Notes under the pieces: generated by a model
Databases searched by the model: none
Seen by the model: the letters and a program-made list of their open reading frames with translations, nothing else
What the model was told of the DNA's origin: nothing
IMG/VR virus record: IMGVR_UViG_3300010403_000705
Location: 124,001-188,000 of that record
Length of the DNA stretch: 64,000 nt
Reading direction: 5' to 3' (one strand)
Made by a program: the position numbers and the translations under genes
Part shown: piece after piece, positions 3 to 58,909 of the stretch
Numbering within the stretch: the first letter of the stretch is position 1
How the letters are laid out: each line of letters begins with the position of its first letter

Positions 3-329
3 ACATTTGCTGAATTTTTAGGAGAATTATTTAAAGATAAATTCATAGAAATTTATTTCGGAGAATCATATGAAGAAGTAAGCACAGAACAAGTCTCTAC
101 TTCTTATCCAGCCGTTTTTTGTGGAAAAGTAATAGCAGCTTATAAAACATGCTTGATTGTTAATGGGGCATATGTAAATAATAAAAAAATGCAGATTGGC
201 AACATAATTTTTATAAACGAAAGTGCTATTAAAGCTGTAACAGAGATTGACGGTAAAGGCATTTTAGAAGAGTTATTATTAAGAAGCAAAGAATCTTTAA
301 ATGTAAAAACAAATTTTATAAATAAATAA
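3..329 (+). CDS. hypothetical protein, 3' part (runs off window start)
   Basis: Manual translation: open frame from position 3 (TFAEFLGELFKDKFIEIYFG...) to TAA 327-329; not in the supplied track. Confidence 0.7.
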   Translation, partial: TFAEFLGELFKDKFIEIYFGESYEEVSTEQVSTSYPAVFCGKVIAAYKTCLIVNGAYVNNKKMQIGNIIFINESAIKAVTEIDGKGILEELLLRSKESLNVKTNFINK

Positions 330-333
330 TAAC

Positions 334-1074
334 ATGTATAACCTAGATCAAATTACGAAGATGGCGTATATGTATGAAAATGTATGCTTATCTTTTACTA
401 AAGAAAGTCGTATTGTAAAATTACCTAACGATAAGTACCGTGTACTTTCTGAAAAAGGTAAAAATCTAGGTACTTCTAATTCAAAAGCCGAGGCTAAAAC
501 AAGATTAAAACAAATAGAATATTTTAAGCATAAAGATGATAATAAGGCAGAAGATAGTCAACATTTAGACTTAACTAAAACAGATGAATTTTCTTACTCA
601 GCTATTATGCGATGTTTAAGACAACAAGCTTCAAAAGAACAAGTGGTGGATTTTTTGAAACTCTTTAAGAAAGAGTTTGATAGAGCTGTGAAAAATAAGT
701 TACAAAGACCAGAAAAAATAGCTCTACAAAATTCTTTAATAAAATTAAACAAGATTCATCCAATAAAAATAAATAGAAAATTAGTTAAAACAGCGGCTAT
801 TAGTGAATTAGGAGATCCTATATGGGTTGGAAAATATCTAGCGGATATTATTAGATTTAGTTTAAATAGAATATCTGCTGACAAACGTCCTCTGGCATTG
901 AATAGATTAAGAAATAAAATTTATAATATGAATGAAAATGAGATTGGATCCAAGAATATGCCAGCCACCTCTTCTATGGGGCAATCCATTACTTTCGTCA
1001 AACATGTGCTATTTAATCATGATCCACAATATGTACGAGCTGTGTTAAATAACATAACTAGGAATTTGGTATGA
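334..1074 (+). CDS. putative head-associated protein
   Basis: 246 aa; small basic module IVKLPNDKYRVLSEKGKNLG...RLKQIEYFKH; NKAED and VKTAA motifs like neighbouring head-region proteins. Confidence 0.55.
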   Translation: MYNLDQITKMAYMYENVCLSFTKESRIVKLPNDKYRVLSEKGKNLGTSNSKAEAKTRLKQIEYFKHKDDNKAEDSQHLDLTKTDEFSYSAIMRCLRQQASKEQVVDFLKLFKKEFDRAVKNKLQRPEKIALQNSLIKLNKIHPIKINRKLVKTAAISELGDPIWVGKYLADIIRFSLNRISADKRPLALNRLRNKIYNMNENEIGSKNMPATSSMGQSITFVKHVLFNHDPQYVRAVLNNITRNLV

Positions 1075-1802
1075 TTCAAAAGCTACAAAAAGTTACTAAC
1101 GGTTTATATCGAGGTGGCGCCCCAACTCCTAAAGATGTGCTATGGCTCAAAGAGAATTTACATATTAATAAAATAATAAGTTTAGATCAAATGGCAGGTA
1201 CTAAAATTAATCGTGTATGTGAGATGTTACATATACAACATATTAATTTACCTATTGATAGCTCTCGCCAATCATTATTAAATGTGCTACAACATGATTT
1301 AAAAAAATTATTATTAAACAATGGACCTACTTATATCCATTGTCAAGCAGGCAAAGATCGCACAGGTTTAATTATCGCTTTATTCAAATGTAAATATATG
1401 AATGTTGATCCAGAAGTATCTATCAAAGAAGCTAAATCTTTAGGTTTTGGAATTGGAATTGATCCTCGTATTACTCAATTATATGAAAAGATAATTAGAA
1501 AATGCAAACCATCTAGAGATATAAATAATTCAGATATAGTCTCTAATGAAAGAGAATATAAAAACGATAACCAGGATTCTTTCTTAGAAACAACGTATCA
1601 AGGATCTTTTTCAACATATTTAGATACCACTATACAAAATTCTATGGATGATGCATATAATTATATGAACGTACAAGTCTATGAGCCAATAAAAATGCAT
1701 CAATCTAAGAATAATATACCGCAAGTAGGAATATTTAATAACGATGCTGGAGTAAAAGGTTTTGGTCCTACTGAAAATTATGGTGGGTTTTTTTATGATT
1801 AA
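1071..1802 (+). CDS. protein tyrosine / dual-specificity phosphatase (CX5R family)
   Basis: Intact P-loop YIHCQAGKDRTG (HCxxGxxRT) and N-terminal LYRGGAP segment typical of DSP/PTP domains; low-complexity C-terminal tail. Confidence 0.88.
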   Translation: MIQKLQKVTNGLYRGGAPTPKDVLWLKENLHINKIISLDQMAGTKINRVCEMLHIQHINLPIDSSRQSLLNVLQHDLKKLLLNNGPTYIHCQAGKDRTGLIIALFKCKYMNVDPEVSIKEAKSLGFGIGIDPRITQLYEKIIRKCKPSRDINNSDIVSNEREYKNDNQDSFLETTYQGSFSTYLDTTIQNSMDDAYNYMNVQVYEPIKMHQSKNNIPQVGIFNNDAGVKGFGPTENYGGFFYD

Positions 1803-2445
1803 AAAATCTTATTCAGTTCAAATGACATATGATGTGTCAGATTCAGAGAAGCTACAAGCAGAGCGCGCCTTATTATGTTTTAATCATGTATTAAAATTAT
1901 TGGACATTGCTTCTAATCATTTAGATATTATGAAAACGCCATTCAAAAATAATCCAGAGATGTCTCCCGAAGAAGTAATGAAAGCTCGTGCGGCTATTAG
2001 AAGATTTAGGGATAAATCTATTGAAAATTTTAATGAATTTAAAATAGCTTCTTTTAAGTGTGTGAATGTAATGCAAATTTTTTCATCAGATACTCAAACA
2101 CTAAAATTAATGAAATCATTTATTTCTTCTATTGATGACTTAGAAGTAAAAGTCAATGATTTTGCAGACTTATTTAATGATTTGGAAGATAAAGATTTTC
2201 CAAAAAATGTTATTACTTGTATTGAAGGTATTCAAAAGCAATGTGAAGAGATTGACGAAATAGTAGATGAAAGAGTGAAATCACATATTCAATCTAATAT
2301 CTTAGCTAAAAATTGGGTAGATACAGTTAGTGATGATTTGCAGATGAGAGTGCAAAAAAAAACTCCGTTAATACTAGATCTTTTTAATAAAAGACAAGAT
2401 CAACTAAATAACATAATAAAAGAGAAATCACAATTAGGTAATTAA
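1795..2445 (+). CDS. hypothetical helical protein
   Basis: Track ORF 1762..2445; ATG 1795 overlapping the upstream stop (ATGATTAA) preferred. Confidence 0.7.
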   Translation: MIKKSYSVQMTYDVSDSEKLQAERALLCFNHVLKLLDIASNHLDIMKTPFKNNPEMSPEEVMKARAAIRRFRDKSIENFNEFKIASFKCVNVMQIFSSDTQTLKLMKSFISSIDDLEVKVNDFADLFNDLEDKDFPKNVITCIEGIQKQCEEIDEIVDERVKSHIQSNILAKNWVDTVSDDLQMRVQKKTPLILDLFNKRQDQLNNIIKEKSQLGN

Positions 2446-2558: not shown

Positions 2559-2720
2559 ATGTTTATAAAACATGGTGATGGAAAAATAATGACTGTTATT
2601 GACGAAGAAGAATTAACTGATAAACAAAAAAAAGCAGTTGATGATTTATCTAAAAAATTAGTAAAACAATCTTATAATGATCGGGCTGATTCTTCAACAG
2701 AGAAGAATTCAGGGAGATAA
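2559..2720 (+). CDS. small hypothetical protein (53 aa)
   Basis: GGAG SD at 2547-2550 then ATG 2559 (MFIKHGDGKIM...), in frame with the track ORF. Confidence 0.65.
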   Translation: MFIKHGDGKIMTVIDEEELTDKQKKAVDDLSKKLVKQSYNDRADSSTEKNSGR

Positions 2721-2726
2721 TATAAT

Positions 2727-5700
2727 ATGACATTTATTAAATTAGGTGAATTTATTGAAATTAACAGAGTAGAAAATACTGAATCTTGTATTCCTGCCGT
2801 TAGTGCTGAAGTATTAGAAAATTTTAAAAAAATTGCAATGAACTTAAAAAAAGTTGCTCCAAGAGCAGAAGATTTTTTATATTTTTCTGCAGTTATGATG
2901 CACGCCGCTGAAGCTTCTGGACTTAATGATGATGGCACGCCTAAATTAAATTCTAAAGGTGAAGAAGTTCAAGTTGGCTGGGATAAAAAAAATGGTACTT
3001 GGCGATGGACAACTAACGATCCTAATATTAGACCATATAAAAATTCTAATGGTGATATTTTTCCAGAGGAAGAATTAGTTAAAGCATATAAAAAATGGAT
3101 ACATAAGCCTTTATGTGTTGATCACAAATCTAGTTCAGTTGATCATACAAGAGGATTTATTGTTGATACATACTATGATAGGAATTTAAAAAGAGTTATT
3201 GCGTTATGCGCTTTAGATAAAGCTAATTATCCAGATTTAGCAAGAAAAATTTCAACAGGAATGCAAACTTGCGTATCTATGGGAACTGCTGTAGGACGAG
3301 CTATTTGTACAGAAGAAGGTTGTCATCGTGTAGCTCGTGCTGAATCAGATTTTTGTGAGCACATGAAGCGTAAGACATGCTATGGTGAAATTAACATTGA
3401 TTTAAATCCTATTGAATTATCAATTGTTGTTAATGGCGCTGATCCAAAAGCAAATATTAAGCACATTATCGCTTCTGCTCATACACTTAATAGTTATATT
3501 GAAACTAAACAAAAAGAACTTAATAAATTAGCAGAACAAGAATTTATAGCTAATTTAACATTCAATAATGATAGTGATAGTAATAATACAATAACTAATA
3601 TTAGTGTTAGGTCTGGTTCTTTGGATAGTTTTAAAAAAGATTTAGAAAAAGCTATTGATGATTATCAATCATTAAATTCTTCAATACAAGAAGAAAATAT
3701 TAATTTAGATACTAATGATCTTGCATTTAATCAATCATCTGGCACTGTTGCGATGGACGAATCTCAAATTTCTAACACTGATTCTGGATTAGCACCACCT
3801 CATGCAAGATATGCATCACAAAAGATATTAGATGCAAATTCTATTAAAGAATTACGTGAAATAACAGCCACCATTGAATATAAATTAAATTATATGAAAG
3901 ATAGTTTAAATAAGTTAGCAAATTCTATAAATATACACGAGGAAATCATGCCTTCAAAAGAAATAAATAAAAAGGGTTATTACCTAGGAACGGAAGAGCC
4001 CACCCCTGGTCAGCCTAAATATCCAGTAGATAAAGGTCACATGACTTATGAAGAGGATAAGCATTTACATGGTCAAAAACCATTTCCTGACACGGGTCCA
4101 ATAGATGGAATGCATCCTGGTGTAGAAAGCGCAGGCGTTTCTGAATTAGAACGTAAAAAAATGTTAGCTCGTGCTGAGGCAGAAGAAAGAGCAATCCGCC
4201 GCCAAGCAATAGTTAATCTTGCTAAACAAGCTTTAGAAGATAAAAAAGCACAAGCTTTAGAAGATAAAAAAGCTTATTACGGTAATGGAGATGAAAAAAA
4301 TCCTGGCTTCCCAACTCCCGGCAAACCTAAATATCCAGTAGATAAAGGTCACATGACTTATGAAGAGGATAAGCATTTACATGGTCAAAAACCATTTCCA
4401 GGTGTTGGCGCAGTAGATGGATTACATCCAAGTCCAGAATCAGCTGAAGTATCTGATGAGTTAAAACGTAAAGAATTACTGCATAGAGCAAATACACTAC
4501 ATGGTAGATTTGTAAGAGCAGCTAAGAATGATGGTACTAGAGACTTAGATAATAGTGCTTGGGAAATCCGCTTAGGTGATAAGTTATTGTTAACTGCATC
4601 TGTAAAAGATCTTTCTGGTGGACGATCAGAAATGATGTATGATAGTATCAATACTGCTGAATTTGGGCAAAGACTACTAGAAAAAGTAAAAGTATATGGA
4701 GCTGACAGAGTGCGTTCCTTGGTAAAAAGTGGTCAAGAAACACCGGCGCCTGCTGCACCTCCGGCTGATGCTGCTCCAGCCGTTCCGCCAGAAACAACAC
4801 CTCCAACTGAAACTCCTACCCCTAATGGAGAAGATACTGGTAAAAGTGGAGATCCAAAAGAATCAGCCATAGAATTATCTGAGAAAGTTAGAGATGTAAG
4901 TTCAGATTTAGTTGAAGCTGTAAGAGCTTTAACTGGTGAACAAGCCGAAATGGGTGCTGATATGGGTGCAGCACCTGAGATGGCAGCCACAGCTTCTGAT
5001 TTCAATACCGAACACATGAATGCTTTAAGAGGTGAACTTAATGAATCTCTTACAAGTGCTATGAAAGAAGTTATTGCAGAACTTAATGACCACCAACAAG
5101 AATTAGACATGATAGTTGGTATGTATGATAAGGGCGCAGTAGTTGCTTCAAATGAAGATTTTATTAATACTATTGTAAATGACGCTTTTAATGAAGCTAA
5201 AACTGCAGTTGCCAATGGTTTCAGATTAATGACTGCCTTTGTTAAATACGCTCGTGGCACCAAAGCCATTGTCAAACGTGCAGAAATAGAAGCAGAGCTA
5301 CAGGCATTAGCAGAGGGAGGAGATACTTCGATGAATTCAGAGATTGGTAGTGATGAAGATTTAATGAATCTTATACAAGATACAAATTCAGATTTAAATT
5401 CTGTCCAAGAATTAATGTTTGAGGACACAGATGATGATACAGGTACTGATTTAGAAGGTGGAGATGATTCATTAGAGTCTTTAGAAGAACAGTCGCTTGA
5501 GTTACCTGAAGAAGAACTTACAAATAGTGAAGATCCTCTTGATTTAGAATCTTTACCTACTGATGATAATGATTTAATGGCAAAACCAGAAGAATTAAAA
5601 GATCTACAAGTTAAACCAGGTACTACTGTTCAAATAACAGCAAACTTGCAAACAAAACAAGGACGCGCTGTCCTTCGTGCCAAATTAGCGGCAGATGCTT

Positions 5701-6407
5701 TAGGTAAACCAGATGACGGTCAACTTCAAGACATGTCGAAAGCTAAGTTTAGTGATATGCTAGATGAAGCAGATAGTTTAACCAATGGACAAATTAAAGG
5801 ATTAGACACTAAGCCTTCAGATAATATGGCTTATGTAGAAACTTTACCAGAAGTTAATAAAGCCATGATGGATCTAGCCAAGGCTCCACCAAAAGTACGT
5901 AAAGAGGCGGAAGCAATTCACAGATTAGTCAGCGAAGGCAAACTTGATCCATCAGATTTAGAAGCTTTAGTGGCAGAAGGTCTGGATAAAGATGCTGTGT
6001 CATACTATAAAAAATATTATGGACAAACTGATGGAGGTAGTGAATTTGCAAGTGAGTTAGTTAAAGAGCATGTAAAAGCTCAATTAGAGGATGAGTTAAA
6101 TAAATATAGAATTAAATTAGCTAGGGCTTATGAAGTAGCATATGATATGGTTGAACGCGGATTATGTCATAATGATAAAATAGCTATCTCTTCACAAGTA
6201 GATGAGATTATGAAATTTAACGATGATAGTTTTGATACTCTTAAAAGAGTTGTCGCAAGACATGCTCCTATATTACGTAAAGAAGCTGGACGTATGCCAC
6301 AAGTTGGAATAATTGGATCTGGTGAAAGTAACACATCAGTAACCCCAGAAGACGATTGGTCGCTATTATCAGCAGCATTTGCTAAGACTTCTACAAGGAT
6401 GTTTTAA
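2727..6407 (+). CDS. prohead (capsid maturation) serine protease fused to scaffolding protein
   Basis: N-terminal ~250 aa has clan-SH / HK97-type protease motifs PLCVDH, CVSMG and ELSIVVNGADPKA plus a C-x4-C...CEH insert; remainder acidic, helical, repeat-containing; upstream of capsid gene. Confidence 0.8.
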   Translation: MTFIKLGEFIEINRVENTESCIPAVSAEVLENFKKIAMNLKKVAPRAEDFLYFSAVMMHAAEASGLNDDGTPKLNSKGEEVQVGWDKKNGTWRWTTNDPNIRPYKNSNGDIFPEEELVKAYKKWIHKPLCVDHKSSSVDHTRGFIVDTYYDRNLKRVIALCALDKANYPDLARKISTGMQTCVSMGTAVGRAICTEEGCHRVARAESDFCEHMKRKTCYGEINIDLNPIELSIVVNGADPKANIKHIIASAHTLNSYIETKQKELNKLAEQEFIANLTFNNDSDSNNTITNISVRSGSLDSFKKDLEKAIDDYQSLNSSIQEENINLDTNDLAFNQSSGTVAMDESQISNTDSGLAPPHARYASQKILDANSIKELREITATIEYKLNYMKDSLNKLANSINIHEEIMPSKEINKKGYYLGTEEPTPGQPKYPVDKGHMTYEEDKHLHGQKPFPDTGPIDGMHPGVESAGVSELERKKMLARAEAEERAIRRQAIVNLAKQALEDKKAQALEDKKAYYGNGDEKNPGFPTPGKPKYPVDKGHMTYEEDKHLHGQKPFPGVGAVDGLHPSPESAEVSDELKRKELLHRANTLHGRFVRAAKNDGTRDLDNSAWEIRLGDKLLLTASVKDLSGGRSEMMYDSINTAEFGQRLLEKVKVYGADRVRSLVKSGQETPAPAAPPADAAPAVPPETTPPTETPTPNGEDTGKSGDPKESAIELSEKVRDVSSDLVEAVRALTGEQAEMGADMGAAPEMAATASDFNTEHMNALRGELNESLTSAMKEVIAELNDHQQELDMIVGMYDKGAVVASNEDFINTIVNDAFNEAKTAVANGFRLMTAFVKYARGTKAIVKRAEIEAELQALAEGGDTSMNSEIGSDEDLMNLIQDTNSDLNSVQELMFEDTDDDTGTDLEGGDDSLESLEEQSLELPEEELTNSEDPLDLESLPTDDNDLMAKPEELKDLQVKPGTTVQITANLQTKQGRAVLRAKLAADALGKPDDGQLQDMSKAKFSDMLDEADSLTNGQIKGLDTKPSDNMAYVETLPEVNKAMMDLAKAPPKVRKEAEAIHRLVSEGKLDPSDLEALVAEGLDKDAVSYYKKYYGQTDGGSEFASELVKEHVKAQLEDELNKYRIKLARAYEVAYDMVERGLCHNDKIAISSQVDEIMKFNDDSFDTLKRVVARHAPILRKEAGRMPQVGIIGSGESNTSVTPEDDWSLLSAAFAKTSTRMF
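3948..6407 (+). CDS. putative nested in-frame scaffolding protein (819 aa) from internal Met408
   Basis: GAGGA 3939-3943 then AATC then in-frame ATG 3948; repeat region starts just after this Met. Confidence 0.5.
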   Translation: MPSKEINKKGYYLGTEEPTPGQPKYPVDKGHMTYEEDKHLHGQKPFPDTGPIDGMHPGVESAGVSELERKKMLARAEAEERAIRRQAIVNLAKQALEDKKAQALEDKKAYYGNGDEKNPGFPTPGKPKYPVDKGHMTYEEDKHLHGQKPFPGVGAVDGLHPSPESAEVSDELKRKELLHRANTLHGRFVRAAKNDGTRDLDNSAWEIRLGDKLLLTASVKDLSGGRSEMMYDSINTAEFGQRLLEKVKVYGADRVRSLVKSGQETPAPAAPPADAAPAVPPETTPPTETPTPNGEDTGKSGDPKESAIELSEKVRDVSSDLVEAVRALTGEQAEMGADMGAAPEMAATASDFNTEHMNALRGELNESLTSAMKEVIAELNDHQQELDMIVGMYDKGAVVASNEDFINTIVNDAFNEAKTAVANGFRLMTAFVKYARGTKAIVKRAEIEAELQALAEGGDTSMNSEIGSDEDLMNLIQDTNSDLNSVQELMFEDTDDDTGTDLEGGDDSLESLEEQSLELPEEELTNSEDPLDLESLPTDDNDLMAKPEELKDLQVKPGTTVQITANLQTKQGRAVLRAKLAADALGKPDDGQLQDMSKAKFSDMLDEADSLTNGQIKGLDTKPSDNMAYVETLPEVNKAMMDLAKAPPKVRKEAEAIHRLVSEGKLDPSDLEALVAEGLDKDAVSYYKKYYGQTDGGSEFASELVKEHVKAQLEDELNKYRIKLARAYEVAYDMVERGLCHNDKIAISSQVDEIMKFNDDSFDTLKRVVARHAPILRKEAGRMPQVGIIGSGESNTSVTPEDDWSLLSAAFAKTSTRMF
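4014..4399 (+). repeat. 74-bp perfect direct repeat (4014-4087 and 4326-4399)
   Basis: Both copies read cctaaatatccagtagataaaggtcacatgacttatgaagaggataagcatttacatggtcaaaaaccatttcc (PKYPVDKGHMTYEEDKHLHGQKPFP). Confidence 0.97.
4226..4273 (+). repeat. 24-bp perfect tandem duplication
   Basis: acaagctttagaagataaaaaagc x2, encoding QALEDKKA twice. Confidence 0.95.
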
Positions 6408-6424: not shown

Positions 6425-7129
6425 ATGAGAAATAAAAGTGTATCAGATTTTGTCGCTGCCTCTATGGATGCAGTATTAAAGAGTGCGACACACCAATCTA
6501 TGTTTAACAACACATATAAATTTGCATCACAGCAATGTGAAAAATGTCATAAAACTATGGAAGAATGTTCATGTGATAGTAATAGCGCAGATGATAATGA
6601 TGTGAAAAAGAATTCAGATTCATCTAGTGATAGTAGCTCTAGTGATTCTAGCAGTGCTTTTGATGGCATACTAGATACAAATGACGTATCAGATAAAGAA
6701 GAAGATTGCACTGAAGAAATGGAATCATCTGCTCTTGATGTAGCAATAGATAGTTTACTTACAGCGTCCGCTGCTCTCGATCGTGCAGGATTAGAAAGAG
6801 GATCTTCTCTCAGTTTGAAACTAGCATCATTGGTAGTAGAAGCTAAGAAAAAAGAAGATAGCAAAAAGAAAGATTCTAAAAAAAGTAACAGTGATTCTAA
6901 AAAGAAAAGCGATTCTAATGATGCTAGAGCCAAGAAAAAGAAAGAAGAAGATATGAAGAAAAAGAAGGAAGAAGCGGCAAAAGCTAAGAAATTAAAAGAT
7001 TCTAATGACGCTAGAGCCAAGAAAAAGAAAGAAGAAGATTCTAAAAAATCTTCCTCAAGATCATCTTCATCGTCCTCTAGTTCCAGCTCTAGTAAAAGAC
7101 CTAATCCATTTCTAAAAAAAAGTAAATAG
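6425..7129 (+). CDS. low-complexity acidic/basic head-region protein
   Basis: 234 aa; Ser/Asp-rich middle, helical AALDRAGL motif, Lys/Ser-rich tail; AAGGA SD. Confidence 0.7.
   Translation: MRNKSVSDFVAASMDAVLKSATHQSMFNNTYKFASQQCEKCHKTMEECSCDSNSADDNDVKKNSDSSSDSSSSDSSSAFDGILDTNDVSDKEEDCTEEMESSALDVAIDSLLTASAALDRAGLERGSSLSLKLASLVVEAKKKEDSKKKDSKKSNSDSKKKSDSNDARAKKKKEEDMKKKKEEAAKAKKLKDSNDARAKKKKEEDSKKSSSRSSSSSSSSSSSKRPNPFLKKSK
6911..7039 (+). repeat. 42-bp direct repeat (6911-6952, 6998-7039), one mismatch
   Basis: gattctaatga(t/c)gctagagccaagaaaaagaaagaagaagat = DSNDARAKKKKEED twice. Confidence 0.9.
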
Positions 7130-8113: not shown

Positions 8114-8803
8114 ATGCTTAGATTAGTACAAGTTGGAAACACATTACCTGGTAGTTTTATCGTCGATCCTTCGGCAGAATTTCAACCTGGACAAATTGCT
8201 GAATTAACTGTTTTAGGAAACCAAGTAATGGTAACAGTGAGTAATGGAACTGCACCACTTGGCATCATTGATGATATTAAAACTAGAGCATTTACTAATG
8301 TATCTTGGAACGAGGAAGTACGAGTTCCTGCAGTTGGTGTACCTGGACCTAACAATGTTTTAGTAACTCCTATTGATATTAAAGCTGAATTAAGAAGACC
8401 TAATATAATACGTTCTAGTTTTTCTTCTACTATTAAAGCAGAATTAAATCCCGTTAATGGTGTTATTACTTTTTTAGCAGGTACACCTCTTAACATCGAT
8501 TTAATAGGTGCGGGTCAACCTAATGGCATTAAAGCTATTGTTAATTACACATATCAAGTAGCAAATATCCCAGGTGATGATAGTACACAAGGATCTGGTA
8601 GAGTTACTGTATGGTTTAATAGAATGTTTTTTCAAACCGATCAATATGAGACTAATCAACAATATCCTGTCAAAGCTAATTTATATGTTAGTGAAGTTGG
8701 ATTTTTAACTACTAGAAGACCTAGTACTATACATCCCGCAGTTGCTATGGTAACTGCACCACCTACTCCAATTAATCCCATGATAGAATGTCTTTGGTAC
8801 TAG
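8114..8803 (+). CDS. capsid decoration/cement-like protein, paralog 1
   Basis: 229 aa, beta-rich; MLRLVQVG and GSGRVTVW match MALKLLQPG and GSGKVTLW of the gene directly upstream of the capsid gene. Confidence 0.55.
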   Translation: MLRLVQVGNTLPGSFIVDPSAEFQPGQIAELTVLGNQVMVTVSNGTAPLGIIDDIKTRAFTNVSWNEEVRVPAVGVPGPNNVLVTPIDIKAELRRPNIIRSSFSSTIKAELNPVNGVITFLAGTPLNIDLIGAGQPNGIKAIVNYTYQVANIPGDDSTQGSGRVTVWFNRMFFQTDQYETNQQYPVKANLYVSEVGFLTTRRPSTIHPAVAMVTAPPTPINPMIECLWY

Positions 8804-8840: not shown

Positions 8841-9547
8841 ATGCACTATTTATATAAAATTACAAATGTTATTAACAACAAAGTTTACATAGGACAAACT
8901 AATAGTCCAAATTATAGGTGGTATCAGCATTGTTCTTACGCAAAAAAGAAAACAAACACAAACAATATATACATTATGCCATGGCAAAATATGGTGTTGA
9001 AAATTTTACATTTACAATAATTGCGTCTTGTATTGTAAATGATCAAATTGATATTGATAATATAGAAAATATTATAATTAATCAATACAATAGCAGAAAT
9101 AAAGAATTTGGTTATAATTTAAGAGTTGGCGGTAGTCGCGGTTTTCATTCTGAAAAAACAAAACAAAAAATAAGACAAGCTACTTTAAAATAAATCGCAG
9201 AAAAAGGTCATCCTGCTTTAGGTCATAAATGGACACAAGAACAAAAAGATAAATTAAGTATTGCTTTAAAATCTTTAGATAAAGAAAAAATATATACTTC
9301 TGAAGTTAGACAGCATATGTCAGAGGCTCATCTTGGTCATCAAGATTCCAAGGAAACCAAAGAAAATAAATCAGAAAGTGCCAAGCGAGTATGGGTGCAA
9401 AGAATTGATTATTCTGAAATAAAATGTCAAGCAACAAATTGCTCCATTACGGGGAAGGCAAAATATAAAATTGTTGATAACATTAGATATTGTAATAAAC
9501 ATGGCTTAAGAATGTTACGTCATGGAAAATTAGAAAGATTAAAATGA
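8841..9547 (+). pseudogene. GIY-YIG homing endonuclease with NUMOD3-like repeats, disrupted
   Basis: GGAG SD, ATG 8841: MHYLYKITNVINNKVYIGQT; frame break in the A-tract at 8942-8948; continues ...YGVENF...GYNL...GG; in-frame TAA 9191-9193; then HxxExKxK-type repeats to 9547. Confidence 0.9.
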
Positions 9548-9703
9548 AGTTTATAAATGTTTGAGATGTGATTCACTAATATCTCTGGCTGAGTGGAATA
9601 AAATTTATAGATTTTCTATTATCACACAATATATTTTATTAATTAGTTATACTGCATATATTTTCATATAATATAGATTATACTATATATTTGAGGCTTA
9701 CCT

Positions 9704-16026: not shown

Positions 16027-16725
16027 ATGGCTTTAAAATTATTACAACCAGGCGTACAACCTTTAGGTCAGTATGATGGTCTCGATACAGAATTTTTAAC
16101 ATTAAAAGGTGGAGAAATTGTTAGTTTCACTTCAGTTCCTGTTTCTGGATCTGATAAAGCGGCTAGAGACGTACTTGATGGATATGTAAATCCAGGTTCT
16201 GTTCAAAAAAGAGTAGCAGTAACCAGAAACGTTCCCACTACAAAAAGACCTCTTATGTTATCTGATGATGGTATTACTGGATATGGAACTTTATTTGGTT
16301 CCATAATTGGTGGTAGTTTAGGTGGACAAGTAGTTGGAGTTACTATAGGACCACACACTTCTTTAGGTTCAGGTAAAGTAACATTATGGGAAAAACCTGG
16401 TATCTATGCTGTATCTTTAGATGCATGTGATACATCATCTACTGATGGATTACAGCCTACTAATACAACTTTAGATACAGGAGCGGCATTAACTTGGGTT
16501 CCAGCTAGTACTTCTGGGGGTCGGCTAACTCCAGTTGGTAGTGCAGCGGCTGCTGGTAACACAGTGGTTGTGGGTCGCTTTATTGATTTTGAAAGTAATG
16601 GTTCTCTTGTTACTACTCCAAGTAGTTTAGTAGCGGCACTTAATGCACCAGATGGCACATTAGGGGGAGCACTTCCAAAACAATTTGCTTTTGCTACTTT
16701 CTATTTTAATCCTCCATCTGCTTAA
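16027..16725 (+). CDS. capsid decoration/cement-like protein, paralog 2
   Basis: 232 aa, Gly/Thr/Val-rich, immediately upstream of the major capsid gene (position of lambda gpD-type genes). Confidence 0.7.
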   Translation: MALKLLQPGVQPLGQYDGLDTEFLTLKGGEIVSFTSVPVSGSDKAARDVLDGYVNPGSVQKRVAVTRNVPTTKRPLMLSDDGITGYGTLFGSIIGGSLGGQVVGVTIGPHTSLGSGKVTLWEKPGIYAVSLDACDTSSTDGLQPTNTTLDTGAALTWVPASTSGGRLTPVGSAAAAGNTVVVGRFIDFESNGSLVTTPSSLVAALNAPDGTLGGALPKQFAFATFYFNPPSA

Positions 16726-16839: not shown

Positions 16840-17853
16840 ATGAATATGTTCAATAATCAAAACACAATGAACGCCTCCTCTTTAAAAGATATGTTGCAAC
16901 AACTAGTAAAATATGCAGCAGTTTTAGAAGAGAATCAACCAGCCAATATGGGTCTAGCTGGTCAAGTTTCATTAAGTGATGATAAAAGAGATGAGTTAAT
17001 TTCACGTGCTATTGTTACTCAAGATGGTAAAATTGCTTTAGCACAAGCTATGGCAAATCCAATTAGAAGAAACTTAGATTATCATGGTATTGCACGACGT
17101 GCACTTGTTGTAGATCCTTTACCTCAAGCAGCTACACCAAGTTACGATAGAGATATTGATGTCGCAGCTGTTGTTATTTCATCCAATGGTACTGGACCAG
17201 AATCTAGGGTGTTTGGTGATAGAGTAGTTGTTCCTACATTTGAAATATATGCAAATCCTACTGTTAGAATTTCTGAAGTAAGACGTCGTAGATTTAATGT
17301 TATTGATAGAGCTGTACAAAAAGCCCGTCAAGAAATTATGGCTCAAGAAGATGCAAATATCTTTGCAGCTATGGATGCCGCTGCTTCAGTAGAAAATACT
17401 TTAACTGATATTGCAGATGCAGGTCTTCTAAAAAGAGATCTTGTAGAAATAAAACAACAAATTGATCGTTGGGATTTAGTAACCACTAAATATTTTATGA
17501 ATATCAATGAATTCACTGATATGCTAAAATGGGGTTCCGGTGGTGGTCAAGGTGTTGGCGGTGGAGATTTTGATCCTGTGACTATGAGAGAAGTATTACA
17601 AACTGGTTTATATGCTCATATTTGGGGTACAGATATTATGGTAAGTAAAATTGTACCACCAGGCACAATTTATGGAGCAGCAGATCCTGAATTCGTGGGA
17701 GTAATGCCAATTAGACAAGATATCGAAGTTCTTCCTGCAGACGAACCAAAACAACTAAAACTTGGTTGGGTAGTTTCAGAAGAAATTGGAATCGGAATTG
17801 TAAATCCAAGAGGCGTCGCTGCCGGTAGAAAGAGTGTTGTTCTAGGCGCTTAA
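16840..17853 (+). CDS. major capsid protein (HK97-like fold)
   Basis: 337 aa; strong SD; downstream of protease/scaffold and decoration genes, followed by a terminator; LVVDPLPQ E-loop-like segment and terminal GWVVSEEIGIGIVNPRGV strand typical of HK97-fold capsids. Confidence 0.88.
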   Translation: MNMFNNQNTMNASSLKDMLQQLVKYAAVLEENQPANMGLAGQVSLSDDKRDELISRAIVTQDGKIALAQAMANPIRRNLDYHGIARRALVVDPLPQAATPSYDRDIDVAAVVISSNGTGPESRVFGDRVVVPTFEIYANPTVRISEVRRRRFNVIDRAVQKARQEIMAQEDANIFAAMDAAASVENTLTDIADAGLLKRDLVEIKQQIDRWDLVTTKYFMNINEFTDMLKWGSGGGQGVGGGDFDPVTMREVLQTGLYAHIWGTDIMVSKIVPPGTIYGAADPEFVGVMPIRQDIEVLPADEPKQLKLGWVVSEEIGIGIVNPRGVAAGRKSVVLGA

Positions 17854-20387: not shown

Positions 20388-20469
20388 TTTGATATTTGTA
20401 AAATAAAATAAATATCACTTATTATTAAAGTATATAATAAACACTATCTTATAATTTGAGGTGCTAATT

Positions 20470-23277
20470 ATGTCTGGATTTGGAATACCTGGAACTGTTG
20501 GTGGCGGAGGGGGTGGTGGAGGAGGCGGAGATGCTTCGTCCGCAAATCAATTAACCCAAATTAATTTAGCCAATAGTACTAATAATTTACTAAATGCTGG
20601 TTTGCCATCATCTCTAGGAGTAGGTGGTGGATTAAAAATTGATGGATCAGGTTCCGCATTACCAATATCTGGAACTATTACTGCTAACATTGGTTCATCT
20701 GGCTCCCTAGCCCTTGATAGTTCAATTACATCATTATCACAAAAATTTAGTTCTTTGGGTCAGAAAACTTCAATTAATTCTACACCAGTTGTATTAGCAT
20801 CTGATCAGTCTATTATTGCTATATCTGCTGTATCTTTACCTTTGCCTACTGGAGCGGCTACAGCTACCCTACAAAATACAGGTATCAATTTATTAACTTC
20901 TCTTGATACTAAAGCTCCAACTTTAATTGGCGGAAGATTACCTGTGGATGGCTCTGGAGTTACTCAACCAATTTCTGGTTCAGTCACTGCTAATATTGGA
21001 TCAACCAATGGCTTAGCTTTAGATTCTAGTATTACATCATTAAACAATAAATTTGCAACTTTGGGTCAAAAATTATCTACTGGATCTACTCCTGTTGTAA
21101 TAGCATCTGATCAATCCGCTATTCCTATTTCTGGAAATATATCAATTTCAAATTTTCCATCTACACAAAATATTTCAGGAACTGTGACTGCTAATATAGG
21201 TACTACTAATGGAATAGCTTTAGATACAACACTGTTATCATTGTCTGCTAAATTTAATTCTTTAGGTCAGAAAACTTCAGCTAATTCAAGTCCAGTAGTA
21301 ATTGCTTCTGATCAGTCATCAATATCCGTAAATGCAAGTAGTCTTCCACTTCCAACTGGAGCATCTACTTCGGCTCTTCAATCTTCTACCAATTCTTTAC
21401 TTACTTCTATTGATAATAAAATAACTACAGTTAATACTGGGGCTGTAGTAGTAACTTCTTCTACTTTACCAACTGGAGCTTCAACTTCATCCCTACAAAC
21501 CACAGGAAATAATTCTTTATCTTCTATTGATACTAAAGTTCCTGCTTTAGTATCAGGTCGTGTACCAGTAGATGGTAGTGCTGTAGTTCAACCAGTTTCT
21601 GGTAACGTTGCAATTTCTAATTTTCCAGCTTCGCAGCCAGTAACTTTTTCTGGTTCTTTACCAGCTGGAACTAATCAGATTGGTCATGTTATTACTGATA
21701 TTGGTTCTACTGTTGCTGTAAGTAATTTTCCTGCTACACAGCCTATTTCAGGCACAGTTACTGCTAACATTGGTACAACTAATGGTTTAGCATTAGACAC
21801 TTCAGTAAATAATATTAACTCTAAATTAGGTTCTTTGGGTCAAAAAAATTCTGCCGGCTCAGCACCAGTAGTAATTGCTTCTGATCAGTCTACTCTACCT
21901 ATCTCTGCTAGCTCGTTACCTTTGCCAACAGGTGCCGCTACTTCAGCTTTGCAAACCAGCGGCAATGCTTCTTTAACATCAATTGCATCTTCTGTAACAT
22001 CTTTAGATAACAAATCACCTATTTTAATTTCTGGTAGAATACCAGTAGATGGAAGCGGAGTCACACAACCTATTTCAGGAACTATCACTGCCAATATTGG
22101 TACTACTAACGGTCTGGCATTGGATACTACTTTAGCTAAACTTAGTGTTTCTCAAGGTGTGGCTTTAGGTGCAAATACTCAAACTTTGATTGGAGGATCT
22201 GTAACCACTGCGGCTCCTACTTATATTACTGGTAATATCAATCCATTATCTTTAACTACCGCAGGAGCGCTAAGAGTAGACAATAGTGGTAACACACAAC
22301 CAGTGGCTGGTACGATTACTGCTAATATAGGTACCACTAATGGATTAGCCTTAGATTCTACATTATCCTCTTTGAATTCTAAATTTAATACTTTAGGACA
22401 GAAGACATCTGCTAATTCTACTCCAGTTGTTATTTCTTCTGATCAATCTTCTTTGTCTGTTACAGTAGGTAATTTTCCAGCTACACAAGCTATTTCAGCA
22501 ATTTCATTACCATTGCCGACAAATGCAGCCACTTCTGCTTTACAAACCACGGCAAATAATTCATTATCATCTATTGATGGAAAAATTATTGCTGTTAATA
22601 CAGGTGCAGTAACTGTTTCTTCTTCTGTTTTACCTACTGGAGCATCTACTGCTACTTTACAAACTTCAGGAAATGCATCTCTAACATCTATTGACTCTAA
22701 AACAGCTGCTTTAGTATCTGGAAGAGTTCCAGTTGATGGATCTGCGGTAATACAACCTATTTCTGGCACTATAACAGCTAATATTGGGACTACTAATGGA
22801 TTAGCATTAGATTCTAATTTAACGAGCTTAAGAAATCAGATCCCTACTACTTTAGGACAAAAAACTTCTGCTAACTCTTTGGCAGTAGTTATTGCATCAG
22901 ATCAATCTGTTGTATCTATTACCGGATCTGTGAACGCAGCTGCTCCAGTTTGGAATCGTACTGCTACTGGATCTATTACTGCTACATCTACAGGCACTAT
23001 TAAAAATAGTGCTGGCAGATTAAGAACAATAAGAATCTTATATAGTGGAGGTGGAACTAATTATTTTCAAATACATGATAAATTAACCGCTACTGCTTTC
23101 AGTAATGCAACTTTGGTTGGATTTGGATATGAAATTTCAAATACATTAGATTCCTTATTATTAGATTTTTCTGAGGAATTAGTAATGTCAGTCGGTATTT
23201 GCTGGGGCATCTCTTCGACTCAAGGGACATACACTGCTGCAGCTCAAAATGCAATTGTTTTTGCGGAATTCATTTAA
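20470..23277 (+). CDS. long repeat-rich fibre-like virion protein
   Basis: GAGGT SD then ATG 20470; poly-Gly N-terminus; 6x LGQK..S..VV(I/L)(A/S)SDQS, 7x TANIG....(L/I)ALD, 6x LPT(G/N)A.T..LQ. Confidence 0.7.
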   Translation: MSGFGIPGTVGGGGGGGGGGDASSANQLTQINLANSTNNLLNAGLPSSLGVGGGLKIDGSGSALPISGTITANIGSSGSLALDSSITSLSQKFSSLGQKTSINSTPVVLASDQSIIAISAVSLPLPTGAATATLQNTGINLLTSLDTKAPTLIGGRLPVDGSGVTQPISGSVTANIGSTNGLALDSSITSLNNKFATLGQKLSTGSTPVVIASDQSAIPISGNISISNFPSTQNISGTVTANIGTTNGIALDTTLLSLSAKFNSLGQKTSANSSPVVIASDQSSISVNASSLPLPTGASTSALQSSTNSLLTSIDNKITTVNTGAVVVTSSTLPTGASTSSLQTTGNNSLSSIDTKVPALVSGRVPVDGSAVVQPVSGNVAISNFPASQPVTFSGSLPAGTNQIGHVITDIGSTVAVSNFPATQPISGTVTANIGTTNGLALDTSVNNINSKLGSLGQKNSAGSAPVVIASDQSTLPISASSLPLPTGAATSALQTSGNASLTSIASSVTSLDNKSPILISGRIPVDGSGVTQPISGTITANIGTTNGLALDTTLAKLSVSQGVALGANTQTLIGGSVTTAAPTYITGNINPLSLTTAGALRVDNSGNTQPVAGTITANIGTTNGLALDSTLSSLNSKFNTLGQKTSANSTPVVISSDQSSLSVTVGNFPATQAISAISLPLPTNAATSALQTTANNSLSSIDGKIIAVNTGAVTVSSSVLPTGASTATLQTSGNASLTSIDSKTAALVSGRVPVDGSAVIQPISGTITANIGTTNGLALDSNLTSLRNQIPTTLGQKTSANSLAVVIASDQSVVSITGSVNAAAPVWNRTATGSITATSTGTIKNSAGRLRTIRILYSGGGTNYFQIHDKLTATAFSNATLVGFGYEISNTLDSLLLDFSEELVMSVGICWGISSTQGTYTAAAQNAIVFAEFI

Positions 23278-58405: not shown

Positions 58406-58458
58406 ACTCCTTATTGATAATTTATCTATAATTGCGCATTAAGAAGAGAGTTACATAT

Positions 58459-58890
58459 ATGTCATTTGATCTTAAAATAAAAAATAAAGATTTAGTTATT
58501 ATTAATGGTGCTTTACAAACAGTAGTGGATAGTGAAAAACTAATACAAGACATATTAAAAATGTGTTTAACTACTACTGGATCTAACGTATATCAACCGT
58601 GGTATGGATCTTTTCTATCACGAACAATTGTTGGAAATCCTCTTCATACATCTATATTAGTACAAGTTGCTAAATCACAGTTAAATACTGCATTGGATAA
58701 TTTGAAAAATCTACAAAATGCACAAGTACAATCATTTCAAAGAGTTAGCGCTGACGAACAAATTAATGCTATTATAGATATATCTATAATAAGAAATCAA
58801 ATTGATCCTAGGTTATTTGATGTACGTATTCAAGCTACAACCAAGGGATTAAAACCTATTACTACAGCATTTAGGGTTTCTTCAATATAA
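58459..58890 (+). CDS. baseplate wedge protein, gp25/gpW-like (sheath initiator)
   Basis: MSFDLKI...DLVI...EKLIQDI..L.T..GS..YQPWYGS.L: gp25/GP46-type pattern; directly before J-like gene. Confidence 0.85.
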   Translation: MSFDLKIKNKDLVIINGALQTVVDSEKLIQDILKMCLTTTGSNVYQPWYGSFLSRTIVGNPLHTSILVQVAKSQLNTALDNLKNLQNAQVQSFQRVSADEQINAIIDISIIRNQIDPRLFDVRIQATTKGLKPITTAFRVSSI

Positions 58891-58909
58891 AATTGCTGAA
58901 GGATAACAC

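What the first reader, a model, noticed from the sequence alone, without database searches (positions are those of the whole stretch)
1071..1802. CX5R phosphatase embedded among head morphogenesis genes: possible virion-packaged phosphatase
Seen: intact HCQAGKDRTG, start overlapping the previous stop and stop overlapping the next start, with an NNSD motif at the boundary between catalytic domain and a low-complexity tail. Known: poxviruses package the DSP VH1; CX5R enzymes also act on inositol (pyro)phosphates and other small phosphoesters. Inference: delivered with the DNA to reverse host kinase signalling or kinase-based defence, or to control phosphorylation of structural proteins.
Basis: partly seen in the sequence, partly recalled or inferred. 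Interest (0 to 1): 0.6.

Follow-up and report, generated by a model that had tools for sequence, protein, structure and literature searches.

The report
Head-module phosphatase of a megaphage
A giant soil phage, and all its sampled relatives, carry an intact cysteine phosphatase inside the head-assembly gene block; its tail shares a short motif with the capsid scaffold, which suggests (unproven) that the enzyme is loaded into the capsid.

Summary
ORF 1071-1802 (+) encodes a 243-aa protein with an intact HCQAGKDRTG loop. Its start overlaps the previous stop and its stop overlaps the next start. It lies between portal and protease-scaffold/major capsid genes of a 433-kb, phage-G-related soil myovirus.

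Residues 1-146 fold confidently as an atypical dual-specificity phosphatase, closest to TpbA, Siw14 and AtPFA-DSP1.

The "low-complexity tail" is wrong. Residues 147-243 are predicted disordered but are as conserved as the enzyme domain.

New evidence ties the protein to head assembly:
- Gene order is fixed in about 80 relatives, and 70 of 70 loci found through the neighbouring gene also carry it.
- Several lineages fuse it to either neighbour.
- One lineage lost the catalytic Cys and Arg but kept the slot and the tail.
- A motif, ΦPQVGΦΦ, occurs in only two proteins of the genome: this tail and the C-terminal end of the protease-scaffold. It is conserved in both families.

Best reading (about 0.45): the enzyme is cargo recruited into the prohead by a scaffold-like C-terminal peptide, and is probably delivered with the DNA. 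Packaging, cleavage, activity, substrate and host are all untested. I found no paper that studies this protein family.

The parts
3..329 (+). C-terminal part of a 127-aa head-module protein (the gene starts 54 nt before the window)
   Evidence: A homologue sits at the same place in 80 relatives. No family match.
334..1074 (+). 246-aa protein (P0295) directly upstream; its stop overlaps the phosphatase start
   Evidence: It is directly upstream in 79 of 80 loci. Its N-terminal part is fused to the phosphatase in 6 proteins. In L006 its homologue is the C-terminal part of a 745-aa SLT + Peptidase_M15_4 cell-wall hydrolase.
1071..1802 (+). Phosphatase gene (P0001, 243 aa)
1071..1508 (+). Catalytic domain, residues 1-146: atypical dual-specificity phosphatase fold
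   Evidence: AlphaFold2 pLDDT is above 95. Best Foldseek matches are Siw14, TpbA and AtPFA-DSP1. A profile search of PDB sequences gives E=7.7e-17 for the TpbA sequence (2m3v, titled 'Putative uncharacterized protein'; 4r0s, named TpbA, 1.7e-16).
1338..1367 (+). P-loop HCQAGKDRTG (Cys91, Asp96, Arg97)
   Evidence: HCxxG[KRSQ]DRTG is kept in nearly all of the roughly 290 homologues checked.
1509..1799 (+). Conserved C-terminal extension, residues 147-243: acidic, predicted disordered
   Evidence: pLDDT about 50. Conservation is shown. It is found only on this phosphatase family.
1524..1535 (+). NNSD, part of the conserved D-x-N-N-[AS]-D-I-V-S-N-x-R-E block at the domain/tail boundary
   Evidence: D150, N152, V157, N159 and R161 invariant; D155 nearly invariant.
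1716..1736 (+). IPQVGIF motif, 27 residues from the C-terminus
   Evidence: PQVG occurs in only 2 of 674 ORFs of the genome. P-x-[VIAL]-G lies in the last 50 residues of 214 of 261 full-length homologues.
1737..1799 (+). Terminal peptide after the motif (Gly/Asn-rich, then PTENY, then GGFFYD): the most conserved part of the tail
   Evidence: The last 27 residues (217-243, nt 1719-1799, which include PQVGIF) have pairwise identity 0.78. A C-terminal peptide with the same core (ΦP-x-VG … G-x-GP-x-E … Φ) is kept at the extreme C-terminus even in P0223, which has a roughly 500-aa insertion.
1795..2445 (+). 216-aa helical-bundle protein (P0296) directly downstream; its start overlaps the phosphatase stop
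   Evidence: It is directly downstream in 67 of 71 loci. It is fused to the phosphatase in 13 proteins. All 70 of 70 loci found through this protein carry the phosphatase upstream.
2559..2720 (+). Small conserved ORF of about 53 aa (ATG at 2559 is the likely start; listed from TTG at 2520)
2727..6407 (+). Prohead protease (N-terminal ~250 aa) fused to a long acidic scaffold-like region (P0297, 1226 aa)
   Evidence: phrog_18299 head maturation protease, 1.2e-11. It is 34% identical to phage G gp19 over residues 35-250, and gp19 is named head maturation protease in 10.1101/2024.12.16.628780. The remainder has 178 D+E against 111 K+R and internal repeats.
6294..6314 (+). MPQVGII motif in the protease-scaffold, 36 residues from its C-terminus
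   Evidence: It is conserved in 47 of 49 distinct scaffold C-termini. The codons differ from those in the phosphatase at synonymous sites, so this is not a DNA repeat. hhalign aligns the two profiles on this motif (P=1.3e-4, probability 54%).
16840..17853 (+). Major capsid protein
   Evidence: phrog_2522, 8.1e-76. 53% identical to phage G gp27.

Best explanation
The gene encodes an active cysteine (CX5R) phosphatase of the atypical dual-specificity type. It is a fixed component of the head-assembly module in a clade of uncultured 200-480 kb myoviruses distantly related to phage G.

Proposed mechanism:
1. The folded enzyme (residues 1-146) carries a conserved, disordered, acidic C-terminal extension.
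2. The end of that extension (ΦPQVGΦΦ, a Gly-rich spacer, then an acidic-aromatic patch) imitates the C-terminal end of the protease-scaffold polyprotein.
3. The imitation brings the enzyme into the assembling prohead with the scaffold. PQVG may be the site where the prohead protease releases it.
4. The enzyme then stays in the filled head together with the products of the neighbouring genes (246-aa and 216-aa proteins, cell-wall hydrolase).
5. It enters the host with the DNA and removes phosphate from a host-made substrate.

Shown here: the fold, the intact active site, the fixed gene order, the gene fusions, the dead-enzyme variant, tail conservation, and the shared motif.

Inferred: recruitment into the prohead (about 0.5), retention and ejection (about 0.35), and the substrate (unknown; the variable general-acid position and the invariant Asp in the P-loop are leads only).
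For: Enzyme:
- Intact HCX5R loop.
- Pfam Y_phosphatase2, 8e-13.
- pLDDT above 95 for residues 1-146.
- Closest solved structures are TpbA, Siw14 and AtPFA-DSP1.
- The P-loop is conserved in nearly all of about 290 homologues.

Head module:
- Gene order is terminase, portal, 411 aa, glucosaminidase, 127 aa, 246 aa, phosphatase, 216 aa, small ORF, protease-scaffold, then major capsid protein. All are on one strand, with overlapping stops and starts around the phosphatase.
- Sheath and baseplate genes follow.

Synteny:
- 246-aa gene directly upstream in 79 of 80 loci.
- 216-aa gene directly downstream in 67 of 71.
- Protease-scaffold within 4 kb in 57 of 57.
- Portal upstream in 52 of 53.
- The order is kept down to 32% identity.
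- 70 of 70 loci recruited through the 216-aa protein carry the phosphatase.

Fusions:
- 13 proteins join the phosphatase to the 216-aa protein, 6 join the N-terminal part of the 246-aa protein to the phosphatase, and one (counted in both) joins all three.
- In L006 the 246-aa homologue is part of a cell-wall hydrolase.
- Other versions in the same slot add pentapeptide repeats, a second phosphatase domain or a 500-aa insert.

Role beyond catalysis:
- P0144 lacks the Cys and Arg but keeps slot, length and tail. It occurs on 8 contigs from at least 3 samples.

Tail:
- As conserved as the enzyme domain, predicted disordered, and found nowhere else.

Shared motif:
- PQVG occurs only in the phosphatase tail and the scaffold C-terminal end among 674 ORFs; 0.5 are expected. 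A degenerate 7-mer gives the same two hits; 0.29 are expected.
- It is conserved in 214 of 261 phosphatases and 47 of 49 scaffolds, at similar distances from the C-terminus.
- hhalign P=1.3e-4. The similarity is at protein level only.

Precedent:
- T4 internal proteins and Alt carry targeting propeptides that the prohead protease removes, and they are ejected.
- The SPN3US protease is proposed to use a C-terminal propeptide for targeting (PMC7411985).
Against: - There is no direct evidence of presence in any virion. No relative is cultured, and only one DNA run and no RNA run hold the sequence.
- The motif is short and I noticed it by eye after looking at both proteins. The hhalign probability is only 54%.
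- Phage G, the only cultured relative, has neither the phosphatase nor the motif in the head region examined, nt 1-32,000; a tblastn of the whole phage collection at E<=1e-3 also gave no phage G hit. Its virion proteome therefore gives no help.
- A late cytoplasmic enzyme could sit in a late operon for expression reasons alone.
- In fused forms the terminal peptide is internal. It therefore need not act as a free C-terminus.
- The phosphatase evolves faster than the core head proteins: 44-63% identity against 70-90%.
Confidence: 0.45

Rival explanations
1. Prohead-only component. The protein is recruited into the prohead by its scaffold-like tail. It acts there as a core or assembly factor or regulator, and is degraded or expelled with the scaffold at maturation. 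It is therefore absent from mature virions and never delivered to the host.
For: - The shared motif links it to the scaffold, which normally leaves the head.
- The dead-enzyme variant shows a role that does not need catalysis.
- The neighbouring 216-aa protein is a plain helical bundle, like many core or scaffold proteins.
Against: - The active site is conserved in about 99% of homologue clusters. A purely structural role does not explain that.
- No phage kinase was found that would create an assembly-linked phospho-substrate.
- Neighbours include cell-wall hydrolases whose catalytic domains are swapped between relatives. That fits proteins that meet the host.
Confidence: 0.2
2. Late cytoplasmic enzyme. 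The protein is made with the head proteins but never enters the capsid. It acts in the infected cell on host or phage phospho-substrates, for example against a kinase-based defence triggered by capsid proteins. Its tail binds the 216-aa or 246-aa partner or a host target.
For: - Co-expression alone would explain the operon position and the translational coupling.
- The phosphatase diverges faster than the structural genes, as host-interacting proteins often do.
Against: - It does not explain the motif shared only with the scaffold end.
- It does not explain retention of a catalytically dead copy in the same slot.
- It does not explain presence in every sampled head module of the clade.
Confidence: 0.2
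3. The substrate is not a phosphoprotein. Wherever the enzyme acts, it may hydrolyse a small or lipid phosphate: a phosphoanhydride such as polyphosphate or a nucleotide pyrophosphate, a phospholipid head group, a 5'-phosphorylated nucleic acid, or a phosphorylated nucleotide signal.
For: - The best structural relatives, Siw14 and AtPFA-DSP1, cleave inositol pyrophosphates and lack the usual general-acid Asp (PMC9038691).
- The equivalent position (D63) varies across the phage family.
- Weaker matches include PTPMT1, glucan phosphatases, RNA 5'-phosphatases and nucleotide-system phosphatase families.
- The P-loop G-K-D-R-T-G matches the PtpB-type family PF13350.
Against: - TpbA, an equally close relative, is deposited as a protein tyrosine phosphatase and was solved with bound phosphotyrosine.
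- The P-loop lacks the cluster of basic residues that binds inositol pyrophosphates (PMC9038691).
- Bacteria are not known to make inositol pyrophosphates (my own knowledge).
Confidence: 0.3
4. Not a real functional gene: a chance ORF or a decaying acquired gene.
For: None found.
Against: - Hundreds of full-length homologues exist.
- dN/dS is about 0.35, with dS near saturation.
- The structure prediction is confident.
- The gene is present in every sampled head module of the clade.
Confidence: 0.01

Closest known systems
Pseudomonas aeruginosa TpbA (PDB 2m3v, 4r0s)
   Same: Best sequence-profile match among solved structures (E=7.7e-17 for the same sequence under 2m3v; 1.7e-16 for 4r0s, named TpbA). 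Same small dual-specificity fold. The nearest cellular homologues of the phage enzyme are bacterial proteins of this type at 26-30% identity.
   Different: The phage protein starts directly with the fold and shows no signal-peptide-like N-terminus. Its P-loop is G-K-D-R rather than G-N-N-R. It carries the 97-residue conserved tail, which no cellular homologue has. TpbA's Asp105 position is not conserved in the phage family.
Siw14 / AtPFA-DSP1 (plant and fungal atypical DSPs, Pfam PF03162)
   Same: The Pfam family assignment is above threshold. They are the top Foldseek matches. Like them, the phage family has no conserved general-acid Asp on the WPD-equivalent loop (PMC9038691).
   Different: The phage P-loop is not polybasic and holds an invariant Asp. 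Their substrates, inositol pyrophosphates, are eukaryotic. The context here is a phage head module.
Mycobacterium tuberculosis PtpB and Pfam PF13350
   Same: The P-loop segment HCxAGKDRTG matches this family (PF13350, 1.1e-7 over residues 79-116; 1ywf, E=1.1e-5).
   Different: Only the P-loop region matches. The rest of the fold is the smaller DSP type. PtpB's broad specificity is recalled from memory and was not tested here.
T4 ejection proteins (IPI-III, Alt) and SPN3US head cargo
   Same: These are enzymes or internal proteins loaded into the prohead through a short targeting propeptide. The prohead protease processes them and they are ejected with the DNA (PMC7411985). The phage protein has a conserved terminal peptide and sits beside the protease-scaffold gene.
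   Different: The T4 signal is N-terminal and binds the core. Here the candidate signal is C-terminal and resembles the scaffold's own end. Loading, cleavage and ejection are unproven here.
Vaccinia VH1 and baculovirus PTP (virion-associated cysteine phosphatases of eukaryotic viruses)
   Same: Same superfamily, with weak profile matches (2q05, 2p4d, 8gz4 and 1yn9 at E about 1e-3). They are a conceptual precedent for a phosphatase carried in a virion (memory).
   Different: The sequence relation is only distant. Host domain and particle architecture differ. There is no evidence of common origin.
UniProt A0A6J5RU40, 'Protein-tyrosine phosphatase, SIW14-like' of an uncultured Caudovirales phage
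   Same: Full-length member of the same family (56% identity, 247 aa).
   Different: Automatic annotation only. I found no study of the family.

Membership tests
Cysteine-based protein tyrosine phosphatase superfamily (CX5R) | P-loop H-C-X5-R-[ST] with catalytic Cys and Arg | tested here: met
   HCQAGKDRTG at residues 90-99. It is conserved in nearly all homologues.
Cysteine-based protein tyrosine phosphatase superfamily (CX5R) | PTP/DSP alpha-beta fold with the P-loop between a strand and a helix | tested here: met
   AlphaFold2 pLDDT above 95 for residues 1-146. 217 PDB matches at E<=0.001; all of the 50 best rows shown are phosphatases of this fold.
Cysteine-based protein tyrosine phosphatase superfamily (CX5R) | Conserved general-acid Asp on the WPD-equivalent loop | tested here: not met
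   D63 is present in the window's protein. Across homologues the position varies (D, N, G, E, S, T, L, F, K). An invariant Asp96 inside the P-loop could substitute; this is a lead from memory of myotubularins and was not tested.
Cysteine-based protein tyrosine phosphatase superfamily (CX5R) | Phosphatase activity abolished by Cys-to-Ser | not testable with these tools
   Needs recombinant protein.
PFA-DSP / Siw14 family (Pfam PF03162) | Score above Pfam's gathering threshold | tested here: met
   48.7 bits against 27, over residues 7-106.
PFA-DSP / Siw14 family (Pfam PF03162) | Polybasic P-loop (Lys, Arg, Lys, His, Arg) that binds inositol pyrophosphate | tested here: not met
   The phage loop is C-Q-A-G-K-D-R. 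The AtPFA-DSP1 residues are listed in PMC9038691.
PFA-DSP / Siw14 family (Pfam PF03162) | Hydrolysis of the beta-phosphate of inositol pyrophosphates | not testable with these tools
   Needs an enzyme assay. The substrate is not expected in bacteria (my own knowledge).
TpbA-like bacterial DSP | Closest sequence-profile relation | tested here: met
   E=7.7e-17 (2m3v, same sequence, untitled) and 1.7e-16 (4r0s, TpbA) over profile positions 4-130.
TpbA-like bacterial DSP | Export signal (periplasmic enzyme) | tested here: not met
   By inspection only. The N-terminus MIQKLQKVTNG runs straight into the first strand at residue 6. No signal-peptide predictor was available.
Capsid-targeted cargo / ejection protein (T4 IP/Alt type) | Encoded and co-expressed with head-assembly genes | tested here: met
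   Position, strand and overlapping stops and starts. Fixed synteny.
Capsid-targeted cargo / ejection protein (T4 IP/Alt type) | Short terminal targeting peptide | tested here: inconclusive
   The candidate is a C-terminal peptide whose ΦPQVGΦΦ core is shared only with the scaffold end. It is not N-terminal as in T4. Function untested.
Capsid-targeted cargo / ejection protein (T4 IP/Alt type) | Processing by the prohead protease | not testable with these tools
   The cleavage specificity of this protease type is unknown. It needs mass spectrometry.
Capsid-targeted cargo / ejection protein (T4 IP/Alt type) | Presence in purified virions and entry into the host | not testable with these tools
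   No cultured relative carries the gene. Phage G lacks it in the head region examined (nt 1-32,000) and gave no tblastn hit at E<=1e-3.

The most novel reading that the evidence does not exclude
The C-terminal peptide (ΦPQVGΦΦ, a Gly-rich spacer, then an acidic-aromatic patch) may be a portable capsid-loading and protease-release signal used by both the scaffold and its cargo. These megaphages would then load an enzyme into the head by scaffold mimicry, and the phosphatase would be the first cysteine-phosphatase effector known to be injected by a phage. The slot appears to accept further payload domains: pentapeptide repeats, a second phosphatase domain, a large insert.
Probability: 0.3. Interest if true: 0.75.

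Novelty: new variant of a known kind. Interest (0 to 1): 0.6.

Why it matters
Giant phages carry many proteins in their heads, but how these proteins are selected for loading is known for only a few model phages. Here a recognisable enzyme is a fixed part of the head module of a widespread, uncultured megaphage clade. It shares a short terminal motif with the scaffold.

That gives a concrete, testable loading signal, and a candidate injected effector with an easily assayed activity. If confirmed, it would:
- add a phosphatase to the small list of phage-delivered enzymes;
- point to host phosphorylation, or a phosphorylated small molecule, as an early target of infection;
- offer a peptide tag for putting foreign proteins into large capsids.

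If it is wrong, the result is still a well-delimited new subfamily of atypical dual-specificity phosphatases with a conserved disordered tail.

Tried and rejected
- **Complex prediction** of the phosphatase with the 216-aa neighbour returned 'no answer' (score 0.00). It is not evidence either way.
- **Nucleotide search of 50,697 phage records** found nothing.
- **Protein search of the same phage records** found only two 'Acinetobacter phage MD-2021a' records. These are really bacterial chromosome (secA, trpA and similar genes) with a TpbA-like gene.
- **Phage G** shares portal, protease and capsid protein but has no phosphatase, 246-aa or 216-aa homologue and no PQVG motif in its head region. 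Its particle proteome therefore cannot be transferred; the phosphatase it reports, gp437, lies outside the head region examined, and P0001 gave no tblastn hit in phage G at E<=1e-3.
- **The 216-aa protein** folds as a generic four-helix bundle with no informative structural match. The language-model leads to HlyE/HBL scored 0.80, which is chance level.
- **The 246-aa protein** gave only unnamed viral clusters.
- **NCBIfam** added nothing.
- **The tail profile** finds nothing else in the genome.
- **No Hanks-type kinase** is encoded in the genome.
- **Promoter-like sites** occur no more often than chance.
- **Host**: no tRNA gene lies in the window, and prokaryote genomes hold only distant catalytic-domain relatives. 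The host stays unknown.
- **Expression**: only one DNA run (soil, probably the source) and no RNA run hold the sequence. Timing could not be examined and read laying was not used.
- **T4-type L-x-E cleavage site** in the tail: considered and dropped, because the consensus L-D-E is L-E-T in the window's own protein.
- **Shared N- or C-terminal peptides** among other head-module proteins: none seen.
- **A suspected paralogy** between ORFs 8114-8803 and 16027-16725 was not supported.
- **Literature**: searches found no paper on this family.
Full report
**1. The observation**

ORF 1071-1802 on the + strand encodes 243 residues with HCQAGKDRTG at residues 90-99.
- Its ATG overlaps the stop of the upstream ORF (ATGA).
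- The ATG of the next ORF at 1795 overlaps its TAA at 1800-1802.
- NNSD is at residues 152-155.

**2. The genome**

The window is bases 124,001-188,000 of a single 432,844-bp virus record with about 33% G+C, estimated 97% complete. It was assembled from a soil metagenome.

- The major capsid protein (16840-17853) matches phrog_2522 at 8e-76. It is 53% identical to gp27 of Bacillus/Lysinibacillus phage G.
- Upstream of the window lie the large terminase (622 aa; phrog_675, 1.9e-61) and the portal (607 aa; phrog_16240, 9e-51).
- Downstream lie tail sheath (39603-42377) and baseplate genes (58432-63004).
- The standard code reads all of these as long ORFs. No other genetic code was needed.

So this is one long, co-directional structural block of a very large myovirus.

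**3. Gene order around the finding**

Terminase, portal, 411 aa, a 327-aa glucosaminidase (PF01832), 127 aa, 246 aa (P0295), phosphatase (P0001), 216 aa (P0296), a small ORF, then a 1226-aa protein (P0297).

The N-terminal ~250 residues of P0297 match a head maturation protease (phrog_18299, 1.2e-11). They are 34% identical to phage G gp19, which the phage G multi-omics preprint names as head maturation protease. The rest of P0297 is acidic, repetitive and scaffold-like.

The phosphatase therefore sits two genes before the protease-scaffold gene and about 15 kb before the capsid gene.

**4. The protein**

*Family and fold*
- Pfam: Y_phosphatase2 at 48.7 bits (cut-off 27). Weaker partial matches include Y_phosphatase3 over the P-loop.
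- With a 69-sequence alignment, AlphaFold2 gives pLDDT above 95 for residues 1-146 and about 50 for residues 147-243.
- The best solved relatives by profile and by fold are P. aeruginosa TpbA, yeast Siw14 and Arabidopsis PFA-DSP1.

*Active site*
- The P-loop HCxxG[KRSQ]DRTG is kept in nearly all of about 290 homologues.
- The position of the usual general-acid Asp (D63 here) varies freely. Asp96 inside the P-loop is invariant.
- PFA-DSPs also lack the general acid (PMC9038691). However, the phage loop lacks their polybasic character.

*Tail*
- The tail is acidic: 14 D+E against 6 K+R, while the enzyme domain is basic.
- It is as conserved as the enzyme domain. Pairwise identity is 0.68 against 0.63 among close relatives, and 0.78 for the last 27 residues. 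dN/dS is 0.37 against 0.33, with dS near saturation.
- It occurs only on this phosphatase. There is no other copy in the genome, no other domain partner among 91 tail-matching proteins apart from mis-called starts and fusions, and no tail in any prokaryote genome. Prokaryotes hold only catalytic-domain relatives at 30% identity or less.

**5. Distribution and synteny**

The family is large: 477 clusters at 90% identity and 1042 representatives at 50%. It is carried on contigs of up to about 480 kb.

In 83 loci from relatives:

| Feature | Loci |
|---|---|
| 246-aa gene directly upstream | 79 of 80 |
| 216-aa gene directly downstream (the others have an inserted gene) | 67 of 71 |
| Protease-scaffold within 4 kb | 57 of 57 |
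| Portal upstream | 52 of 53 |

- The order survives down to 32-36% phosphatase identity (L006, L007).
- Loci recruited independently through the 216-aa protein carry the phosphatase in 70 of 70 cases with enough upstream sequence. Within this clade the gene is core, not an occasional passenger.
- It evolves faster (44-63% identity) than terminase, portal or the 216-aa protein.
- Phage G has no counterpart in the head region examined (nt 1-32,000), and the tblastn of the whole phage collection gave no phage G hit at E<=1e-3.

**6. Evidence for physical integration with the head module**

(a) *Gene fusions.* Thirteen proteins are phosphatase plus 216-aa protein, six are the N-terminal part of the 246-aa protein plus phosphatase, and one (counted in both) joins all three. 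In L006 the 246-aa homologue is the C-terminal part of a 745-aa SLT + M15 cell-wall hydrolase that directly precedes the phosphatase.

(b) *Domain accretion in the same slot.* Versions exist with pentapeptide repeats plus phosphatase plus tail (P0259, L155), with a tandem phosphatase (P0175), and with a roughly 500-aa insert between the catalytic domain and the terminal peptide (P0223, L156).

(c) *A dead enzyme.* P0144 has Gly for the catalytic Cys and Ile for the Arg, yet keeps length, tail, overlapping start and slot. It occurs on 8 contigs from at least three samples. P0253 (Cys to Phe) and P0128 (Arg to Cys) are further cases. The protein therefore has a role that does not need catalysis.

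(d) *A shared motif.*
- The tail holds IPQVGIF 27 residues before its end. The protease-scaffold holds MPQVGII 36 residues before its end.
- Among 674 ORFs (132,494 residues) of the genome, PQVG occurs only in these two proteins; 0.5 occurrences are expected. A degenerate seven-residue pattern also finds only these two; 0.29 are expected.
- The motif is conserved in 214 of 261 full-length phosphatases and in 47 of 49 distinct scaffold ends.
- In the window's two proteins the same spacing then leads to P-T-E-N-Y and P-E-D-D-W, followed by a hydrophobic residue.
- hhalign aligns the two C-terminal profiles on the motif with P=1.3e-4 and probability 54%.
- Codons differ at synonymous sites, so this is not a DNA repeat.
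- Caveat: the motif is short and I found it by eye.

**7. Mechanism proposed**

In model phages, scaffold and protease are held in the prohead by terminal segments. Cargo such as T4 IPI-III and Alt is loaded by a short propeptide that the prohead protease removes, after which the cargo is ejected with the DNA. For SPN3US a C-terminal propeptide is proposed to target the protease (PMC7411985).

By analogy, I propose three steps:
- The phosphatase tail mimics the scaffold's C-terminal end and brings the enzyme into the prohead.
- PQVG may be the release site.
- The enzyme, probably with its neighbours and the cell-wall hydrolase, is delivered at infection.

My estimates are about 0.5 for recruitment into the prohead and about 0.35 for retention and ejection.

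The substrate is open. No phage Hanks-type kinase exists, so a host-made phosphoprotein or a small or lipid phosphate is more likely than phage structural proteins. The absence of a conserved general acid and the PtpB-like P-loop are leads towards good leaving groups or non-protein substrates, not tests.

**8. Rivals**

- A prohead-only assembly factor that leaves with the scaffold.
- A late cytoplasmic enzyme placed in the operon for timing alone.
- A chance or decaying gene, which the conservation data exclude.

Virion or procapsid proteomics and peptide-deletion experiments would separate the first two from the favoured model.

**9. Known or new**

One family member is in UniProt with an automatic 'SIW14-like' name. 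I found no paper that discusses a phosphatase in the head module of these phages.

The enzyme class is known, and so is the idea of packaged enzymes. What is new:
- the combination;
- the conserved tail;
- the scaffold-like motif;
- the fusions;
- the dead variant.

I rate it a new variant of a known kind, with interest 0.6.

**10. Limits**

- The host is unknown.
- There are no expression data.
- The one complex prediction gave no answer and is listed only under things tried.
- Statements about myotubularin, PtpB, vaccinia VH1, baculovirus PTP and herpesvirus scaffolds rest on my own knowledge and are marked as such.

Noticed in passing
window 8841-9020, and the ORF-free stretch 9021-9703: A 59-aa ORF starts like a GIY-YIG homing endonuclease and is followed by about 680 nt with no long ORF. 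Relative L001 has a full 258-aa GIY-YIG gene at the same place. This looks like a decayed homing endonuclease inside the head module.
   Followed up: partly
window 28886-29677 (-); L004 11196-11849 (-); L001 1580-4501; L090 1-6352: Homing-type elements pepper the structural block. There is an HNH endonuclease on the opposite strand in the window and another just before the terminase gene. Relatives carry LAGLIDADG or intein insertions in terminase and portal genes; the L090 portal gene product is 1358 aa.
   Followed up: no
window 4017-4088 and 4329-4400: An exact 24-residue repeat (KYPVDKGHMTYEEDKHLHGQKPFP) occurs twice, 104 residues apart, in the scaffold-like part of the 1226-aa protease-scaffold protein. 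Function unknown.
   Followed up: no
window 1767-1787: A terminator-like hairpin followed by a T-run lies inside the last codons of the phosphatase gene, right before the overlapping start of the next gene. The stem is weak (3 G-C pairs) and may be chance, or it may modulate coupling between the two genes.
   Followed up: no
L009 (CAKLQH020000002.1) and CAKLQF020000003.1 in the phage collection: The two records named 'Acinetobacter phage MD-2021a' that matched the phosphatase are bacterial chromosome (secA, trpA/B, accD, folC) carrying a TpbA-like gene. The phage label is misleading.
   Followed up: yes
L006 7767-10004; L004 16955-17938; L001 7720-8871: The cell-wall hydrolase upstream of the phosphatase swaps catalytic domains between relatives (glucosaminidase here, SLT + M15 peptidase in L006) while the flanking parts stay homologous. 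That fits adaptation to different host walls.
   Followed up: partly
window 6425-7129 (C-terminal end) and 20461-23277 (N-terminal end): The first protein has a run of 11 serines near its C-terminus. The second has a run of 11 glycines near its N-terminus. Neither has a known function.
   Followed up: no
whole record G000: IMG/VR classes this 433-kb record as 'provirus', although it reads as a near-complete (97%) free megaphage genome with no obvious host flank in the parts examined.
   Followed up: no
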